Below are positions 1 to 6,517 of a stretch of DNA of 64,000 bases, one piece after another. A program made the position numbers and the translations under genes. Each line of letters opens with the position of its first letter. The stretch's first letter is position 1. The notes below the pieces were generated by a model, which was given only the letters and a program-made list of their open reading frames with translations, ran no database searches and was not told where the DNA came from. Location: positions 146,209-210,208 of the IMG/VR virus record IMGVR_UViG_3300035698_022190. One strand, given 5' to 3'.

Positions 1-324
1 GGTGGGTTGGCCAGCCCTAATATGCCCTCTTTTGGGGGCATTTGTGGGTAACTGACATTGTTGGGCAGTTAAACTGAAGTTAAACTGTAGTTAAACTCTG
101 ACGTGACCTGTAAGTTTCTAGATAAATTCTCTAAGCTGGTCGCTGGGGTATGTAGCTATCAATTAGGAACTTAGACAGTTTAGTTAAAGTGCGGGTAGTT
201 TTACCCACAAAAAAAACGTTTTTTGTTGCTTAAAATGTTCTCTGAACACTGTTAATATTGAAAGTATCACTTGAAGTCTTTTTAGGTTAAGTTGTTGGTA
301 TTGTTAGAAGTTAGGTTGTTTTCT

Positions 325-746
325 CGACTACCGTAACTACTTTTTCGACTACTTTTTTGAACAGCATGTAAATGTCTGATAGATAGAGAGATAGAGAAGT
401 TCATTCCGTTTTCGACTACAATCAATTGTAGTCGTGTTAACTTCTTATATAATAGTATGTTAGATAGGGTAAATCAGTCGTAACTACCAAAAGCGCACAT
501 AAACCCCCTGTACAGATACGCATTTCGTTTTTAAATTAAAAATGTGAAATATTCAGTTACATAGGGGTCTTATACGGCTTTTTGGTAGTTAGGGGTCGTT
601 TTTGGCTGTAAGTCTTGATATTGCTTGATTTGTTCGACTACAATTGTTGGTAGTCGTGTTTTTGAAAATCTCTTGTAAGTTATTGATAAATAAGGTAGTT
701 GCTCGACTACAATTTTTTGTAGTCGAAACGGCTCTTTTTGTAGTCG
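325..746. repeat. Iteron-like CGACTAC/GTAGTCG repeat array (putative origin or packaging site)
   Basis: Nine heptamer copies; three CGACTAC-N8-GTAGTCG palindromes (413-434, 635-656, 704-725); IHF-consensus site at 676-688 (minus TATCAATAACTTA); non-coding AT-rich context. Confidence 0.7.
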
Positions 747-1618: not shown

Positions 1619-1973
1619 CTCTTAACTCCTTCAGCAGCATATCTGTAATGTTAATAACATCTCGTCTCTCTGCGTCTACATATATAATTTGATGTTCCAT
1701 CTCAATAATGCTCGGACAAGTGAATTGTAGTATACCAAATCCTTTGTCTACCATTTCTTCAATATCTTTGACCGAGAACCAGGATAATAGGCCAGCTTTA
1801 TCAGCTACTGCGGTTTTCCAGTTCTTGCCATCAGTTTGGTGGATTGGATCATAAGGCATTGGCAAATTAAGCAATCTGTCATCTGACAACTGCTCAAGTA
1901 CCAGTTTACCATCAATTTTTGTAGTCCACATTCCATTTGATTCATCTAAATGTTCTATTCTACACAACCTCAT
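1608..1973 (-). CDS. Hypothetical phage protein
   Basis: 121-aa ORF overlapping both neighbours in an operon. Confidence 0.7.
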   Translation of the reverse strand: MRLCRIEHLDESNGMWTTKIDGKLVLEQLSDDRLLNLPMPYDPIHQTDGKNWKTAVADKAGLLSWFSVKDIEEMVDKGFGILQFTCPSIIEMEHQIIYVDAERRDVINITDMLLKELRDDS

Positions 1974-2328
1974 CTCGTAATTCCTTATATTTACCGGCTA
2001 TTACTCCTAAGCGTTGCTTTTCAAGAGTAAAGCCATGTTCAGCAGGATTTTCTGTCATATATGTAGCTGCTAACTGCTCAGTAGCAAATACCTGAAAATC
2101 TGTATCTATTCCGTCCCAGCCCATATCAATATAGACTAACCATACTTCTTGGTGATAGGCTAATTGATGACTAGCACCAATTAATGCTACGTTTAGGCTG
2201 GATAAAGCTTTATCTTTGGCGTCTTTTAGTCTTTTATCACTCATACATTTTAAGCAAAGATCTTCAGACCACCACACTGCATTAGATATTGTACTGCTGC
2301 ATTCTCTGCAGATCTTTTCTTCTGCCAT
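1960..2328 (-). CDS. Hypothetical protein with N-terminal CxxC..CxxC; start reassigned to 2328
   Basis: AGGAGA RBS before MAEEKICREC; the longer ORF overlaps a tRNA-like gene. Confidence 0.7.
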   Translation of the reverse strand: MAEEKICRECSSTISNAVWWSEDLCLKCMSDKRLKDAKDKALSSLNVALIGASHQLAYHQEVWLVYIDMGWDGIDTDFQVFATEQLAATYMTENPAEHGFTLEKQRLGVIAGKYKELRDEVV

Positions 2329-2348
2329 TTGCGTCTCCTTTAAAATTG

Positions 2349-2414
2349 CTAAGTATGCCGGAATCGAACCGGCGTCACTCGTTTGTGAGTATATTACCCC
2401 TCTACCAATACTTA
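2349..2414 (-). tRNA. Minimal/degenerate tRNA-like RNA, no assignable anticodon
   Basis: Acceptor TAAGTAT/ATACTTA, T-arm GCCGG-TTCGATT-CCGGC, D-loop with GG; anticodon arm only ACTC-ACAAAC-GAGT; followed by CAA. Confidence 0.65.
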
Positions 2415-2462
2415 GGTTCATCTGGTCGCGAACCAGAGTCTTCTTTGACGTCAGTCAAAATT

Positions 2463-2578
2463 TTACGAGCATGCAAGTATGTGTTGGATCAGGGCACATT
2501 TAGCCGACATCCTAGGTCTCGACGTATTCTATCCGATGCACCTTGGATACATTGTATCCACGGCACTTGCGCCCGTAA
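2463..2578 (-). ncRNA. Structured RNA, unknown family
   Basis: Long closing helix TTACGGGC.GCAAGT/ACTTGC.GCTCGTAA with internal hairpins. Confidence 0.4.
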
Positions 2579-2600
2579 TAAGGCTATATTCCAAAATTTG

Positions 2601-2766
2601 TGACCAGTGGAGGATTTGAACCCCCGATTATAGAGACTAGTGAGTTTCGCTCTATTAGCCTGCTGCTTACTACGCAGCGCTACACTTGAATACCCGGCTC
2701 ACTACTATCGAATATTACCGTGCGAATGTTTTAAAGAGTCTCGCCCTCTAAAACATAAAACTGGTC
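2601..2766 (-). ncRNA. 166-nt expanded tRNA-like RNA
   Basis: Perfect acceptor GACCAGT/ACTGGTC, discriminator A then CAA; T-arm GGGGG-TTCAAAT-CCTCC; 13-bp hairpin in the D-arm position; branched interior. Confidence 0.7.
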
Positions 2767-2777
2767 ATTGCAATGTA

Positions 2778-2999
2778 TTATTTCTTCGGAGGAAGTCCAA
2801 GACTATCTTGACGCTCAAGATAATGTTCAAGGGCCTCCGTTACTACCCAGGAGAATCTTTTTGTGGTAAGACGTTTCCATCCGAATAGTCTCTTTAAAGA
2901 ATTCTTTAGAGCAGGCTCAATAGTACATTCCCACTCAACGAAGTCTCCATCGATCTCTACTTCTTTGATAATTTTAAAACTTCCTAACTTTTTCTCCAT
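2778..2999 (-). CDS. Small hypothetical protein embedded in the RNA cluster (possibly ribbon-helix-helix-like)
   Basis: AAGGA RBS; C-terminal SWVVTEALEHYLE helix. Confidence 0.6.
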   Translation of the reverse strand: MEKKLGSFKIIKEVEIDGDFVEWECTIEPALKNSLKRLFGWKRLTTKRFSWVVTEALEHYLERQDSLGLPPKK

Positions 3000-3033
3000 A
3001 TGAATATCCTTTAATTTAAAGTATTAGGAATAA

Positions 3034-3142
3034 GGCTTAACTTTTCACCGGCGACTTTCAGGATTCGAGTATGAAATGTCCCGCCCGACTTAGAGGGGCC
3101 TCCTTGCAATGATCAACCTGCACGAGCTATCTGGGTTAAGCC
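3034..3142 (-). ncRNA. 109-nt structured RNA, unknown family
   Basis: Terminal stem GGCTTAAC/GTTAAGCC, GC-rich interior, AT-rich flanks. Confidence 0.45.
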
Positions 3143-3162
3143 ATAAGTTCCTACGAAATTAA

Positions 3163-3431
3163 TTGAGACTGTCCCCGCCTGTCGGTCTTGGGTACAGTTG
3201 GACCGGCCTAGTTAGTGGCTAACTCGTAATACAGTATCGGCAATACCCCATCAGGGGTATCTGCTCTCTTCGGGTTCTCTATATAGGCTCAGTGTACAGC
3301 TATCTTCCGGACTCTGTACTCGATTACTCTATATATTTCCATCCCCGTCCTGTTAACTGAACAAAGGGGATCTGCACTAGGTTAGTATCTTACGGCCAGA
3401 TTCTGTTAGGCTACAATGCCTACAGTCTCAA
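3163..3431 (-). ncRNA. 269-nt structured RNA, unknown family
   Basis: 10-bp terminal stem TTGAGACTGT/ACAGTCTCAA and several internal helices; abuts the tRNA-Gln-like gene. Confidence 0.6.
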
Positions 3432-3436
3432 ATTTG

Positions 3437-3528
3437 ATGAATAGACAGGGTTCGAACCTGCATAGTACCGTTCAAAGCGGCGACATTTCCGAATGCACCT
3501 GCATAGTGCCATTTTATGCTACTATTCA
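3437..3528 (-). tRNA. tRNA-Gln(TTG)-like with an extra hairpin between D and anticodon arms
   Basis: Acceptor TGAATAG/CTATTCA (U1-A72); D-stem GCAT/ATGC; loop CT-TTG-AA in GCCG/CGGT; T-arm GCAGG-TTCGAAC-CCTGT; insert GCATT-CGGA-AATGT. Confidence 0.7.
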
Positions 3529-3531
3529 TTT

Positions 3532-3608
3532 TGGTATATGGGCCGCGTTGCAACCTCATGCATGCATACATGTGTATCCAAGCACAGGGACACATCCTTA
3601 CATATACC
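3532..3608 (-). ncRNA. 77-nt tRNA-His-like mimic lacking canonical D and T arms
   Basis: 8-bp terminal stem GGTATATG/CATATACC; hairpin GTGTCC-CTGTGCTT-GGATAC presenting CT-GTG. Confidence 0.4.
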
Positions 3609-3690
3609 GAGTTCGGGGCAGGCATTGAATGGACGAGTCCACTCTTACCGCCTCCACCATTCTCACCGAAGTGAAAATTTATTTGTAAAT

Positions 3691-3875
3691 TATTGTAGTG
3701 GGCAATCTGAGCTGCTCCGCTGTCACGGACACAGGCATATAATGTTCAGGGTGAATAATATACCAACAGGGTCTTATCCTATACTATGACCGACTCCCTT
3801 AATGAAACCGGCTTTTGTCCGCTGCAGAGTTAACTCGTTGCGGTTCTTGGCGGAAAATAGATTGACATTATAATA
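3691..3875. ncRNA. 185-nt structured RNA, unknown family
   Basis: Long closing helix plus TCCGCT/GGCGGA, CGGACA/TGTCCG and CTGCA/TGCGG; G-U pairs favour the plus strand. Confidence 0.4.
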
Positions 3876-3962
3876 TTGCTAGGGCACAACCCCTGCAGCT
3901 CGTACGATCGCTAGGAAGAGCGGCCTGCCGTTGGCCTATGAAGGTCCATTAATTGAATAGCG

Positions 3963-4120
3963 GACCCGCAACTGGGATCGAACCAGTGTCTCTCTTTTGA
4001 TCGGAATGACCTTTTGTGAGTTATTACATTCCTGATCCCATTTTCATGGGTGTCTCATCCTGCTCTAGTCACTAGGATAATGCTGTCGGAAGCAATTCCC
4101 AACATTTTGACTACGTGAAT
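3963..4120 (-). ncRNA. 158-nt expanded tRNA-like RNA
   Basis: T-arm ACTGG-TTCGATC-CCAGT; weak acceptor ATTCACG/TGCGGGT; D-stem TAGTCA/TGACTA with inserted hairpin. Confidence 0.55.
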
Positions 4121-4548
4121 TTTGTTTCCATATTAACATCCGTAGGTTTGTTCCTGGGCACGTATAAGTTTTACAAAATATACAGTGATTTGATGTTGCT
4201 CCTATTAGTGCGATACCTTTTACGCAAAGCGCCATGTTAATAAAACTATTCTTGATGAGATACGCTCATCTATTCTTTCTAACGTAGTAGTTGGTAGCCC
4301 GGTATACTTAATTGCTTCCAAGTTTGAAATTGTTCGCGAGGGCGGATTGATTCCCGAAGGGGTCACCGCCAACCTCCACCTCACCATACAGTCGCGTGAA
4401 CTGTACTTATGGTAAGACTTTGGATTCAAGTCGCCACCTGAATGCATGTGCTGCACTAGTTTGTTGCCAGCCAGCTTCTGCTTCTCACTTACGTTTAATA
4501 AAGGTTTTGTTCCGGTCTGTTGTTCAGTAGACATTATGGAACAGTTTT

Positions 4549-4556
4549 CTTATACC
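4549..4556 (-). promoter_or_regulatory. GGTATAAG motif heading the RNA operon (one of 17 copies, 4549-28537)
   Basis: Plus-strand CTTATACC/CTTATCCC at 4549, 6236, 6503, 7449, 7523, 8496, 15410, 18535, 20361, 20775, 21331, 23315, 24484, 27226, 27552, 27682, 28530. Confidence 0.75.
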
Positions 4557-4632
4557 AAAAAGAGCCCATAAAATTGAAAAACCCACTTCTAAGAAATGGG
4601 TGAAAGGAGGTCATTTTATGGGCCCAATAAAT

Positions 4633-4821
4633 CTAATGTTGTATAAGTTGATCCATAGTGAACTCGGTGTGGTGTTCACAGGTTCCTGCTTGTTTGCAGC
4701 TAGGGGGCAATGGAACTTTGCAATCCTTTGTAGTACATCTCAAACGACGTTTAAATTCTGCCTGTGTCATTATGTATACTATTACTTTTTCTTTCGGTTC
4801 GTTTGTAAATATATTAGTCAT
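4633..4821 (-). CDS. Small Cys-rich hypothetical protein
   Basis: 62-aa ORF with four Cys. Confidence 0.5.
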   Translation of the reverse strand: MTNIFTNEPKEKVIVYIMTQAEFKRRLRCTTKDCKVPLPPSCKQAGTCEHHTEFTMDQLIQH

Positions 4822-4843
4822 TCACTAGTGTTGATTTGTCTGT

Positions 4844-5245
4844 TTATATGTTGCTGAGAACTTGGTTACTTGACTCTGGTTGTAATAGAGTTTCTGTAAT
4901 AGGTTTATCATCAACTACGCCGACCTTGACTTTAGGGCCGGATTCTTTTAATTTTGCCTTCGAAGCTGTTTTAGTCTTCTTAGCGTCACGCTTTGTAATT
5001 AGATTGTCAAGAAAATCATTTATGTTAACTCCTTCTTTCTTTGGAGTGCCTAAAGTTTTGGCACGCCATTTATCAATAGCAGCTTGCGTGTGTAGATTTT
5101 GCGTGTCTTGACAGTTGAAACACAGCGTATCAGAAAGACCCATGGGTAGGGGTGATGTACACCCCGGTGCAATACATATATCGCGATTCTTGAACTCTGT
5201 CTGTGTCTCCACGTTAATTAATATGCGTTTTGGCTTATCGCTCAT
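4844..5245 (-). CDS. Hypothetical protein with N-terminal zinc finger
   Basis: CIAPGC..CFNC; AGGA RBS. Confidence 0.65.
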   Translation of the reverse strand: MSDKPKRILINVETQTEFKNRDICIAPGCTSPLPMGLSDTLCFNCQDTQNLHTQAAIDKWRAKTLGTPKKEGVNINDFLDNLITKRDAKKTKTASKAKLKESGPKVKVGVVDDKPITETLLQPESSNQVLSNI

Positions 5246-5307
5246 TTTCCTGTTTCCTGTTTTATAATTATTTGTTTCCCAATACTAAATCTGGATGTGT
5301 TAAAAGG

Positions 5308-6111: not shown

Positions 6112-6517
6112 AATACTTAAATATAATAATATCAGTATATTCAGATTAAAATTCCAAGATTAGTGTCTAAATAGTATACATTAAATTGTATACTAAGTAA
6201 ACAGTGACGAATTTTAACGAGATTAGTGCGTACTTCTTATACCGGAAAGTGTAAAAAAATTGGCGTGTAATAACAAGTATTACTAATGGCTTATCTTGTA
6301 TCAGCCCTCTTACTCTAGTCGTTACCTCATAATAATAAGAACCCCTTCTTATTAATTAAAGTAATATAGCTCCTGTATTAAGGGAATTATATGACTGGAA
6401 AGATTGTTCTCCTTCGTGGAAAACAAGTCTAGTTGTTCTTCGTGTTTATCATCCAAGACGCCACCTGATAATTTTGAAGGTCGTTAACCTTCTTGCACAA
6501 TTCTTATACCAGAATAC

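What the first reader, a model, noticed from the sequence alone, without database searches (positions are those of the whole stretch)
2346..4556. 2.2-kb operon of non-canonical tRNA-like and other structured RNAs
Seen: downstream of one GGTATAAG motif, about ten GC-rich, terminally paired units (66-290 nt) are packed end to end with short A/U linkers and only one credible ORF. Four keep an acceptor stem plus T-arm, but none is a normal cloverleaf: arms are deleted, inserted or greatly expanded. Three are followed by CAA rather than CCA. Inference: a processed polycistronic set of tRNA mimics, possibly decoys for anticodon nucleases, modulators of translation or termination linked to the code switch, or new ncRNA classes.
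Basis: partly seen in the sequence, partly recalled or inferred. Interest (0 to 1): 0.85.

Follow-up and report, generated by a model that had tools for sequence, protein, structure and literature searches.

The report
Phage RNA island with tRNA-like punctuation
A 2.2-kb nearly gene-free stretch of a 210-kb salt-lake phage, read from a phage promoter, carries three tRNA-derived elements that keep only the half of a tRNA that processing enzymes recognise, interleaved with structured RNAs that match no Rfam family. It most likely is one long transcript cut into pieces by the host's tRNA-maturation enzymes, but expression has not been shown.

Summary
The GGTATAAG motif is a real, strand-biased promoter-type motif. 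The stretch is GC-enriched (0.44 against 0.37 for the genome). It holds one conserved ORF (73 aa, 2999-2778).

Three units keep a perfect 7-bp acceptor stem and a canonical T arm: 3528-3437, 2766-2601 and 2414-2349. None has a decoding anticodon domain. Only 2414-2349 passes the Rfam tRNA threshold, and it has a 6-nt anticodon loop. Default ARAGORN finds nothing in the window.

The "CAA instead of CCA" tail is not exotic. Ten of this phage's 26 ordinary tRNA genes have the same tail.

"About ten terminally paired units" is only partly supported. The boundaries are minimum-free-energy predictions. Long inverted repeats, tetraloops and sliding z-scores are not enriched.

Two modules, A (3682-3533) and B (3152-3025), recur in related metagenomic phages with compensatory base changes. 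Neither matches any Rfam family.

Best reading: a polycistronic ncRNA/mRNA precursor punctuated by tRNA-derived "t-element"-like processing signals. Decoy or translation-modulator roles are untested. Expression is unproven; two metatranscriptome runs hold only a few words.

Verdict: a new variant of a known kind, of moderate interest.

The parts
4581..4601 (-). Intrinsic-terminator-like hairpin plus T-run that ends the upstream transcription unit
   Evidence: 9-bp stem followed by TTTTT. It is the only minus-strand terminator-like site in 1900-5300.
4549..4556 (-). GGTATAAG promoter-type motif (extended form T-rich + GGTATAAGAA)
   Evidence: 17 copies in the window against 2.4 expected; 29 in the genome, 27 on the minus strand; also upstream of the tmRNA gene and the tRNA array. 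It is conserved at the same place in relative L022.
4508..4544 (-). 5' leader hairpin (CUGUUCC ... GGAACA) right after the promoter
   Evidence: Read from the sequence. L022 has the same stem base (UUGUUC/GAACAA) around a different interior. blastn similarity between window and L022 ends at 4525.
4332..4492 (-). 161-nt predicted structured segment (boundaries from MFE only)
   Evidence: z -2.7 on the minus strand against -0.2 on the plus strand. No homolog was found.
4086..4321 (-). 236-nt predicted segment closed by a 10-12-bp terminal helix (MFE only)
   Evidence: a 10-bp perfect inverted repeat spanning 232 nt. z is -2.3 and not strand-specific. Support is weak.
3865..4083 (-). 219-nt predicted multibranch segment holding a canonical T-arm hairpin (3987-3971, ACUGG-UUCGAUC-CCAGU) with no matching acceptor stem
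3533..3682 (-). Module A: an 8-bp hairpin with a UUCG loop, the conserved linker AAUGGUGGAGG, a long irregular hairpin (core 3682-3612), then a third hairpin (3608-3533)
   Evidence: Homologs are in L004, L022 and L005. The core has 23 pairs, 95.5% of cells paired and 5 compensatory pairs, matched by 1 of 500 shuffles. The covariance model finds a single copy in the genome at 83.7 bits. No Rfam match.
3434..3528 (-). tRNA-like unit 1 (92 nt plus CAA): acceptor UGAAUAG/CUAUUCA, D-arm with GG, T arm GCAGG-UUCGAAC-CCUGU, long variable region, abnormal anticodon arm. It is derived from the phage's tRNA-Leu type.
   Evidence: The Rfam tRNA model reaches only 15.9 bits, over the T arm and 3' acceptor strand. 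Permissive ARAGORN calls a 4-nt 'anticodon'. In the alignment with the three phage tRNA-Leu genes the T-arm region is near-identical and the D-arm region looks similar, while the acceptor stem differs at most positions and still pairs 7/7.
3163..3431 (-). 269-nt predicted structured RNA closed by a 10-bp terminal helix
   Evidence: z -5.1 on the minus strand against -1.7 on the plus strand. No homolog and no Rfam match.
3025..3152 (-). Module B: a 15-bp terminal stem enclosing hairpins with the conserved loops GGUUGAUCAU and (A/C)UCGAAUCC (T-loop-like). It lies directly upstream of the RBS of the 73-aa ORF.
   Evidence: The homolog is L005 1-135, about 75% identical. There are 33 pairs, 100% of cells paired and 5 compensatory pairs, matched by 20 of 500 shuffles. 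No Rfam match.
2778..2999 (-). Conserved 73-aa protein gene (the one credible ORF), with an RBS
   Evidence: Homologs at 57-69% identity and more distant ones. No Pfam or PHROG family. A low-confidence model gives a beta-hairpin plus two helices.
2598..2766 (-). tRNA-like unit 2 (166 nt plus CAA): acceptor GACCAGU/ACUGGUC, T arm GGGGG-UUCAAAU-CCUCC, and four hairpins in place of the D and anticodon arms. One of them is an anticodon-arm look-alike (5 bp, loop GUAGUAA). The unit starts 11 nt after the ORF's stop codon.
   Evidence: z -4.7, with no shuffle folding as well. A marine relative (run X8) is about 95% identical and diverges exactly after the CAA at 2598. Its three mapped substitutions are two in loops and one C-G to U-G.
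2415..2597 (-). 183-nt predicted structured segment ending in a T-arm-like hairpin (2437-2421, loop UUCGCGA, with C where A58 normally stands)
   Evidence: z -2.1. The only candidate acceptor stem has a mismatch.
2346..2414 (-). tRNA-like unit 3 (66 nt plus CAA): near-complete tRNA with a 5-bp anticodon stem and a 6-nt loop ACAAAC (no U33). It ends about 20 nt before the start codon of the next gene (ATG at 2328).
   Evidence: Rfam tRNA 41.6 bits against a gathering score of 29. Default ARAGORN does not call it, and permissive ARAGORN gives a 2-nt 'anticodon'. It is absent at the same position in 90%-identical relatives L002 and L003.

Best explanation
The stretch is a promoter-driven, almost ORF-free RNA island at the head of a minus-strand operon of a 210-kb phage.

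Shown:
- It contains three tRNA-derived elements. Each keeps an intact acceptor-stem/T-arm 'top half' and this phage's normal 3' trailer (discriminator + CAA).
- Their anticodon halves are shortened, remodelled or expanded, so they cannot decode.
- Between them lie structured RNA modules that match no Rfam family. Two of these are conserved with compensatory changes in related phages.

Inferred:
- The long primary transcript is cut by the host tRNA-maturation enzymes. RNase P would cut at the 5' side of each tRNA-like element. RNase Z or exonucleases would trim the 3' side, possibly followed by CCA repair.
- The tRNA-like elements would therefore act as punctuation, like plant-mitochondrial t-elements or the tRNAs in the T4 tRNA/stable-RNA operon.
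- Processing would release the intervening structured RNAs. [quoted passage not shown]

What the released RNAs (Module A, Module B, the 269-nt RNA) do is not known.
For: - Promoter motif and absence of an internal terminator.
- Four canonical T-loop motifs, all on the transcribed strand, against 0.25 expected.
- Three units have 7/7 acceptor and 5/5 T-stem pairs, so 36 of 36 top-half pairs are intact. Their bottom halves score nothing, or only 15.9 bits, against the tRNA model.
- All three are followed by discriminator+CAA. Ten of the phage's 26 ARAGORN-called tRNA genes have the same tail, so 3 of 3 is very unlikely by base composition alone.
- Unit 3528-3437 aligns with the phage's tRNA-Leu genes in the T-arm region, and less clearly in the D-arm region. 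Its acceptor stem differs at most positions and still pairs fully. That argues for selection on pairing rather than neutral decay.
- In a marine relative, unit 2766-2601 ends its similarity exactly after the CAA, so it behaves as a module. Its three mapped substitutions all preserve the structure.
- Positions relative to the ORFs match the t-element arrangement described in PMC1920247.
- Modules A and B covary.
- Several units fold better on the minus strand than on the plus strand.
Against: - There is no direct evidence of transcription or of processed ends. Two metatranscriptome runs hold only 9% and 4% of the sampled words of 3020-3700, and I could not lay their reads.
- Only unit 2766-2601 has the usual U(-1)/G(+1) RNase P context.
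- The relatives' RNA islands (L004, L005, L022) have no tRNA-like units, so punctuation is not a conserved feature of these islands.
- Near relatives L002 and L003 lack unit 2414-2349 altogether.
- The first kilobase (4548-3530) has no complete tRNA-like element.
- The main tRNA array of the same phage also holds degenerate tRNA-like pieces, which fits gene birth and death.
Confidence: 0.45

Rival explanations
1. tRNA-mimic decoys or sponges. The non-decoding tRNA-like RNAs, and Module B with its T-loop and GG loop, accumulate and titrate host factors that bind or cleave tRNAs, such as anticodon nucleases or tRNA-modifying or tRNA-sensing defence proteins. This would protect the phage's own 26 tRNAs.
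For: - The elements keep the elbow-forming parts: G18G19 in the D loop of two units and canonical T loops.
- The phage invests heavily in tRNA biology. It has 26 tRNAs, a tmRNA and an RtcB RNA ligase of the kind used to repair cleaved tRNAs.
- The content of the locus changes between close relatives, as counter-defence loci often do.
Against: - Anticodon nucleases recognise the anticodon loop, which is exactly the part that is missing or altered here (6-nt loops, no U33).
- No defence-related or anti-defence protein is recognisable next to the locus.
- No expression data exist.
- I know of no experimentally shown phage tRNA decoy.
Confidence: 0.2
2. Decaying remnants. The tRNA-like units are pseudogenes left by tRNA-gene turnover, and the rest is fast-evolving spacer or remnants of lost genes. 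In this reading the predicted structures are mostly incidental.
For: - Sliding-window z-scores, long inverted repeats and tetraloop hairpins are not enriched against the rest of the window.
- The main array also holds degenerate tRNA pieces.
- The tRNA-like units are absent from the relatives.
- The 6-nt loop of unit 2414-2349 could be a single-base deletion.
Against: - All 36 top-half pairs are intact while the bottom halves have diverged beyond recognition. The acceptor stem of 3528-3437 changed with full compensation.
- Modules A and B are conserved at protein-level distances of 57-69% identity, with compensatory changes and no broken helices.
- GC is raised by 8 points over the genome.
- 2.2 kb of junk directly behind an active-type promoter is unusual in a phage that is otherwise densely packed with genes.
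Confidence: 0.2
3. Cis-acting leaders. Modules A and B and the other structures are 5'-UTR regulatory elements (riboswitch-like, antitermination or translational control) for the 73-aa gene and the downstream genes, not free-standing RNAs.
For: - Module B sits directly upstream of the RBS of the 73-aa gene in both the window and L005.
- There is no internal terminator, so all of it is co-transcribed with the genes.
- A related island has a conserved module with a terminator-like hairpin just upstream of a gene (Module M, L004/L022).
Against: - In L004 the same gene has a different upstream RNA.
- Module A stands in different neighbourhoods in the four loci.
- A 2.2-kb leader made of many independent modules is far beyond known cis-regulators.
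- No Rfam riboswitch or leader family matches.
Confidence: 0.1
4. The first hairpin of Module A is a CRISPR-repeat mimic (an RNA anti-CRISPR of type V-A).
For: - In L004, L005 and L022 the hairpin reads UUUCUAC-loop-GUAG(A/G). From my memory of Cas12a repeats (AAUUUCUACU...GUAGAU), this resembles them.
- Phage-encoded V-A repeat mimics have been shown experimentally (PMC10651486).
Against: - The resemblance is recalled from memory, not tested against a repeat database.
- The window's own copy has changed the stem sequence with compensation (UCAC/GUGA), so the shape is kept rather than the Cas12a-type sequence.
- The sequence after the hairpin is conserved and paired, unlike a free spacer end.
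- The host and its CRISPR type are unknown.
Confidence: 0.03

Closest known systems
Plant-mitochondrial t-elements (tRNA-like processing signals; PMC1920247)
   Same: Both are non-canonical cloverleafs that keep the GGTTCRANYCC T arm and an acceptor-like stem. Both lie just after or just before ORFs inside long transcripts, where RNase P and RNase Z cleavage creates mRNA ends and releases a small tRNA-like RNA.
   Different: This is a phage, not an organelle. Cleavage has not been shown here. Two of the three elements carry large expansions (92 and 166 nt). They sit among other structured RNAs rather than only between mRNAs.
Phage T4 tRNA operon with its two co-transcribed stable RNAs, species 1 and 2
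   Same: Both are phage early-type transcription units in which tRNA-shaped RNAs and other small stable RNAs of unknown function would be made from one precursor by host tRNA-processing enzymes. The tRNA genes lack an encoded CCA.
   Different: Here none of the tRNA-shaped units can decode. The real tRNA array lies 41 kb away. The non-tRNA RNAs are larger and more numerous. There is no sequence similarity to any phage in the database.
Bacterial Y RNAs (YrlA; PMC4201824)
   Same: Module B has a long stem formed by its two ends and, at the far side, hairpins with a T-loop-like loop and a GG-containing loop. This is the general YrlA layout. The phage also encodes RtcB, which is linked to Y-RNA operons in some bacteria.
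   Different: There is no Rfam Y-RNA match at E up to 10. The phage has no Ro60/TROVE gene. No Ro-binding helix motif was identified.
Canonical phage tRNA genes and tRNA pseudogenes
   Same: Unit 2414-2349 passes the Rfam tRNA threshold. Unit 3528-3437 is a recognisable derivative of the phage's tRNA-Leu genes. The 3' trailers are the same as those of the phage's tRNAs.
   Different: There are 6-nt anticodon loops without U33, or a multi-hairpin replacement of the D and anticodon arms. The top halves are perfectly kept, unlike random decay.

Membership tests
tRNA (Rfam RF00005) | 7-bp acceptor stem followed by a discriminator base | tested here: met
   7/7 pairs in 3528-3437, 2766-2601 and 2414-2349.
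tRNA (Rfam RF00005) | T arm: 5-bp stem and 7-nt loop of UUCRANY type with G53 and C61 | tested here: met
   met in the three units and in the hairpin at 3987-3971. The hairpin at 2437-2421 has C in place of A58.
tRNA (Rfam RF00005) | Anticodon arm with a 5-bp stem and a 7-nt loop carrying U33 | tested here: not met
   2414-2349 has the 6-nt loop ACAAAC. 3528-3437 has a 6-nt loop or an irregular loop. 2766-2601 has one hairpin with a 7-nt loop, GUAGUAA, but it sits in a junction of six helices.
tRNA (Rfam RF00005) | Score at or above the gathering threshold, and a call by ARAGORN | tested here: inconclusive
   Only 2414-2349 reaches 41.6 bits against 29. 3528-3437 reaches 15.9 bits. 2766-2601 gives no hit. 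Default ARAGORN calls none.
t-element-like processing signal (functional class) | Non-canonical tRNA-like fold with the GGTTCRANYCC motif and an acceptor-like stem inside a longer transcript | tested here: met
t-element-like processing signal (functional class) | RNA ends that coincide with the element's ends (RNase P/Z cleavage) | not testable with these tools
   No RNA reads could be laid. RNA runs X18 and X19 hold only a few words.
Y RNA / YrlA | Match to the Rfam Y-RNA models | tested here: not met
   No such hit at E up to 10 in 2000-5000 or in 3010-3700.
Y RNA / YrlA | Ro60 (TROVE) partner gene encoded nearby or in the genome | tested here: not met
   PF05731 has no match in the 210-kb genome. 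The host genome is unknown.
tmRNA | tRNA-like domain plus a tag reading frame, recognised by ARAGORN or Rfam | tested here: not met
   Neither default ARAGORN nor Rfam finds one in the window. Only a relaxed-threshold 'permuted tmRNA' call with an atypical tag appears. The phage's real tmRNA is at genome 95541-95943.
Large phage-associated RNAs in Rfam (ROOL and the rest of Rfam 15) | Covariance-model match | tested here: not met
   cmscan of all 4227 families finds nothing but tRNA. The dedicated ROOL search found nothing, but its control genomes also gave no match, so that search is weak.
RNA anti-CRISPR (type V-A repeat mimic) | Near-identity to the host's CRISPR repeat, including the Cas12a stem sequence | not testable with these tools
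   The host and its repeats are unknown and the resemblance is from memory. The window copy alters the stem sequence.

The most novel reading that the evidence does not exclude
The island is a phage counter-defence or host-takeover cassette made of several new classes of structured RNA. It would include expanded tRNA 'top-half' mimics and an elbow-mimicking RNA (Module B). After release by tRNA-processing enzymes, these would act in trans on host tRNA-binding machinery such as nucleases, modification or sensing systems, or the ribosome. The modules would be shuffled between related phages like protein anti-defence genes.
Probability: 0.15. Interest if true: 0.8.

Novelty: new variant of a known kind. 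Interest (0 to 1): 0.5.

Why it matters
Phage genomes are usually read as strings of protein genes plus ordinary tRNAs. This locus is 2.2 kb of promoter-driven sequence holding at least two RNA modules that match no Rfam family and are conserved with covariation. It also holds tRNA derivatives that retain only the half recognised by RNase P, RNase Z, the CCA-adding enzyme and EF-Tu.

If the punctuation model is right, phages use the tRNA-processing trick known from organelles to cut multi-RNA precursors. If the mimic or decoy model is right, it would be a new RNA-based layer of phage-host conflict.

Either way the locus gives concrete, testable RNAs with defined predicted ends. It also warns that "CAA for CCA" is just this phage's normal tRNA trailer.

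Tried and rejected
Searches for relatives that found nothing useful:
- blastn of the whole locus against 50,697 phage records: no match.
- Self-blast against the 210-kb genome: no paralogs.
- Flanking and inner proteins against IMG/VR and JGI metagenomes by protein patterns: nothing.
- Exact T-arm/acceptor pattern of unit 2766-2601 in IMG/VR: nothing.
- Module A motif in IMG/VR: one chance hit in a GC-rich coding region. In JGI metagenomes it gave 37 hits. One is a clear relative (L022), one is doubtful (L016), and the rest are chance matches, mostly in coding sequence.
- Module B pattern in 185,579 genomes: 26 hits that read as chance matches in coding sequence, for example in a ComM-type gene.
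- Promoter-plus-leader pattern in IMG/VR: apparently unrelated matches only.
- Distant homologs of the 73-aa protein lie in ordinary gene-dense contexts, so the protein is not a marker of RNA islands.
- Looking up spurious ORFs across the RNA region, to reach variant contigs: none is in the protein collection.

Other attempts:
- DNA runs X1, X2 and X5 carry the identical phage and so give no variation.
- Statistics that failed to separate the locus from the rest of the window: sliding z-scores, long perfect inverted repeats, UNCG/GNRA hairpins.
- A codon-usage log-odds scan was too weak to judge the 104-aa ORF.
- Permissive ARAGORN output (intron-containing tRNAs, permuted tmRNA) was judged to be noise.
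- I mis-remembered an Rfam accession for GOLLD; RF01998 is a group II intron domain. GOLLD was still covered by the all-family scans.
- A small conserved peptide behind the GGAGG of Module A was rejected. The frames differ between relatives (read).
Full report
**Where and what.** The window is the last 64 kb of a 210,208-bp virus record. Near-identical sequence occurs in salt-lake and marine metagenomes. The phage has an ordinary tRNA array of 25 genes at 98-107.6 kb, a tmRNA at 95.5 kb and a tRNA with anticodon UCA at 65.8 kb. Stop-free frames lengthen sharply at 50-70 kb if TGA is read as sense, so part of the genome seems TGA-recoded. Everything in the finding lies on the minus strand, from 4556 down to 2346.

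**Checking the observation: promoter and coding content.**
- GGTATAAG is a real motif. It occurs 17 times in the window against 2.4 expected and 29 times in the genome. Twenty-seven copies are on the minus strand, nearly all in intergenic positions 25-40 nt ahead of an RBS.
- The motif also stands ahead of the tmRNA gene and the tRNA array.
- Just upstream of the copy at 4556-4549 is the only minus-strand terminator-like hairpin in 1900-5300. No terminator lies inside the locus. The locus is therefore the head of a transcription unit that runs on into the protein genes from 2328 downward.
- Minus-strand frames are closed throughout, with two exceptions.
- The 73-aa ORF (2999-2778) has homologs of 57-69% identity and is real.
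- The 104-aa ORF (4534-4220) has no counterpart in the related contig L022, which has the same promoter. It has no Pfam or PHROG family and is absent from a 15-billion-protein collection. I treat it as non-coding.
- GC is 0.441 against 0.367 for the genome.

**The tRNA-like units.**
- The T-loop motif GGTTCRANYCC occurs four times in the window. All four are on the minus strand inside the locus, against 0.25 expected.
- A scan for a 5-bp/7-nt T arm directly followed by a strand that pairs 7/7 with an upstream heptamer finds three clean units: 3528-3437 (92 nt), 2766-2601 (166 nt) and 2414-2349 (66 nt).
- Two more T-arm-type hairpins, 3987-3971 and 2437-2421, have no convincing acceptor stem.
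- Only 2414-2349 is a tRNA by Rfam (41.6 bits). Its anticodon stem closes a 6-nt loop, ACAAAC, without U33.
- Default ARAGORN finds nothing in the window. At relaxed thresholds it reports 2-nt and 4-nt 'anticodons', which restates the abnormal loops.
- Unit 3528-3437 aligns with the phage's three tRNA-Leu genes. The T-arm region is near-identical and the D-arm region looks similar. Its acceptor stem differs at most positions and still pairs fully, and its anticodon arm is rebuilt.
- Unit 2766-2601 folds into acceptor, T arm and four further hairpins. Its z-score is -4.7, and no shuffle folds as well.

**The CAA tail.** All three units are followed by discriminator + CAA. This is not a substitute for CCA. 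Of the phage's 26 ARAGORN-called tRNA genes, ten have exactly this tail, four have CAU, and only seven encode CCA. So the three units carry the native tRNA-gene 3' trailer of this phage. That is the best available argument that they enter the same maturation pathway.

This is weaker than it looks.
- Long perfect inverted repeats, UNCG/GNRA hairpins and sliding-window z-scores are not enriched relative to other parts of the window.
- Unit-wise z-scores come from boundaries chosen by the fold itself.
- They are, however, clearly better on the minus strand for four units: 3431-3163 (-5.1 against -1.7), 2766-2598 (-4.6 against -1.8), 3854-3653 (-3.2 against -0.6) and 4492-4332 (-2.7 against -0.2).

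**Comparative evidence.**
- The locus has no match among 50,697 phage records and no paralog in its own genome.
- Relatives were reached in three ways. Homologs of the 73-aa protein led to L004 and L005. A motif scan of metagenomes led to L022. Laying DNA contigs gave a marine relative in run X8.
- L022 has a homolog of the window's upstream 133-aa protein, the same promoter and the same leader-hairpin base. It then has a 0.7-kb ORF-free stretch with different content. The island is therefore positionally conserved but modular.
- Module A (core 3682-3612) occurs in the window, L004, L022 and, more diverged, L005. It has 23 pairs, 95.5% of cells paired and five pairs with changes on both sides, a value reached by 1 of 500 shuffles. 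A covariance model finds one copy in the phage.
- Module B (3152-3025) occurs in the window and L005 at about 75% identity. It has 33 pairs, all paired in both sequences, and five compensatory pairs, reached by 20 of 500 shuffles.
- Both structures were derived from the same few sequences, so these numbers are supportive, not conclusive.
- Neither module matches any Rfam family at E up to 10.
- The tRNA-like units were not found in L004, L005 or L022. Two contigs whose flanking gene is 90% identical carry different sequence in place of unit 2414-2349.
- The X8 contig carries unit 2766-2601 at about 95% identity and diverges exactly after the CAA. Its three mapped changes are two loop substitutions and one C-G to U-G.

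**Mechanism.** The part of a tRNA that RNase P, RNase Z and the CCA-adding enzyme read is the acceptor/T-arm minihelix. This is established knowledge of these enzymes.
- In all three units this half is perfect (36 of 36 pairs), while the decoding half is lost.
- In one unit the acceptor stem has been rewritten with full compensation. That pattern is not expected from neutral decay.
- Unit 2766-2601 begins 11 nt after the stop codon of the 73-aa gene. Unit 2414-2349 ends about 20 nt before the start codon of the next gene, just upstream of its RBS.
- This arrangement matches plant-mitochondrial t-elements, where such non-canonical tRNA-like structures direct RNase P and RNase Z cuts that form mRNA ends (PMC1920247).
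- I therefore favour punctuation of a long ncRNA/mRNA precursor (confidence 0.45). The steps from transcription to cleavage are inferred, not shown.

**Rival explanations.**
- tRNA-mimic decoys (0.2). The phage's RtcB ligase and large tRNA set are suggestive. Against this, the anticodon loops that anticodon nucleases read are exactly what is missing.
- Decaying remnants (0.2). Degenerate tRNA pieces also occur in the main array.
- Cis-acting leaders (0.1). Module B precedes the 73-aa gene in two loci but not in L004.
- A Cas12a-repeat-like reading of Module A's first hairpin (0.03). The resemblance is recalled from memory, and the window's copy changes the stem sequence.

**Expression.** DNA runs only confirm that the phage is present. 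Two marine-sediment metatranscriptome runs hold 9% and 4% of the sampled words of 3020-3700. That could be one small RNA, a relative, or DNA carry-over. I could not lay those reads.

**Verdict.** This is a real and unusual non-coding locus. It holds tRNA-derived top-half elements with native tRNA trailers and at least two conserved structured RNA modules that match no Rfam family. "CAA instead of CCA" and "ten terminally paired units" are over-read. The decoy and recoding links are untested. Novelty: a new variant of a known kind (phage tRNA/stable-RNA operon; t-element-type punctuation). Interest: 0.5.

Noticed in passing
genome 50-70 kb (outside the window); tRNA at genome 65786-65883 (+): Coverage by stop-free frames rises from 0.61 to 1.0 (50-60 kb) and from 0.72 to 0.93 (60-70 kb) if TGA is read as sense. 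The phage carries a 98-nt tRNA with anticodon UCA and an encoded CCA. This looks like regional TGA recoding.
   Followed up: partly
genome 124536-125645 (-), outside the window: A full-length RtcB RNA ligase gene (300.9 bits plus 91.5 bits in one 395-aa frame). No Ro60/TROVE gene and no CCA-adding enzyme were found in the phage.
   Followed up: partly
genome about 100859-100783 (-), L044 about 6284-6360: Directly after tRNA-Lys(UUU) lies a tRNA-like sequence that ARAGORN and Rfam miss. It has a C1/A72 mismatch, anticodon-loop CUCAUAA (CAU) and an encoded ACCA, with a poor D arm. It may be an initiator tRNA-fMet. Other degenerate tRNA pieces lie at about 99386, 99162 and 97211-97136.
   Followed up: no
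L004 1006-1159 and L022 2038-2191: 'Module M' is a 150-nt non-coding block 88% identical between the two relatives, which is more conserved than the neighbouring protein genes (about 70%). It holds a terminator-like hairpin plus a U-run just upstream of a gene's RBS, and it is absent from the window. It may be a riboswitch-like leader.
   Followed up: no
Module A first hairpin: window 3677-3662; L004 76-95; L022 1654-1673; L005 579-598: In the three relatives the hairpin reads UUUCUAC-(3-4 nt)-GUAG(A/G), which I recall as close to Cas12a CRISPR repeats. The window copy keeps the hairpin through compensatory changes (UCAC/GUGA).
   Followed up: partly
window 1-569 (genome 145820-146777) and 451-750: There is a further 958-nt stretch without ORFs of 70 aa or more at the window's start, downstream in the same minus-strand unit. 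Windows 451-600 and 601-750 have minus-strand z-scores of -5.3 and -5.0, partly overlapping the 132-aa ORF 968-570.
   Followed up: no
L022 880-1440 and 3849-4304: The relative has two more ORF-free stretches with hairpin-rich sequence. One lies upstream of its GGTATAAG promoter and one at the contig's end. RNA islands may be multiple in this phage group.
   Followed up: no
genome 101337-101410 and 99399-99473 (-): The tRNA called Tyr(GUA) is only 74 nt, which is class I length. It shares its acceptor stem with tRNA-Thr(CGU). This suggests anticodon switching between duplicated phage tRNA genes.
   Followed up: no
window 2778-2999 (-): The 73-aa protein family is conserved in marine and salt-lake phages but has no Pfam or PHROG family. 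A low-confidence model (pLDDT 66) gives a beta-hairpin plus two helices. More distant homologs sit next to ClpP-type protease genes.
   Followed up: partly
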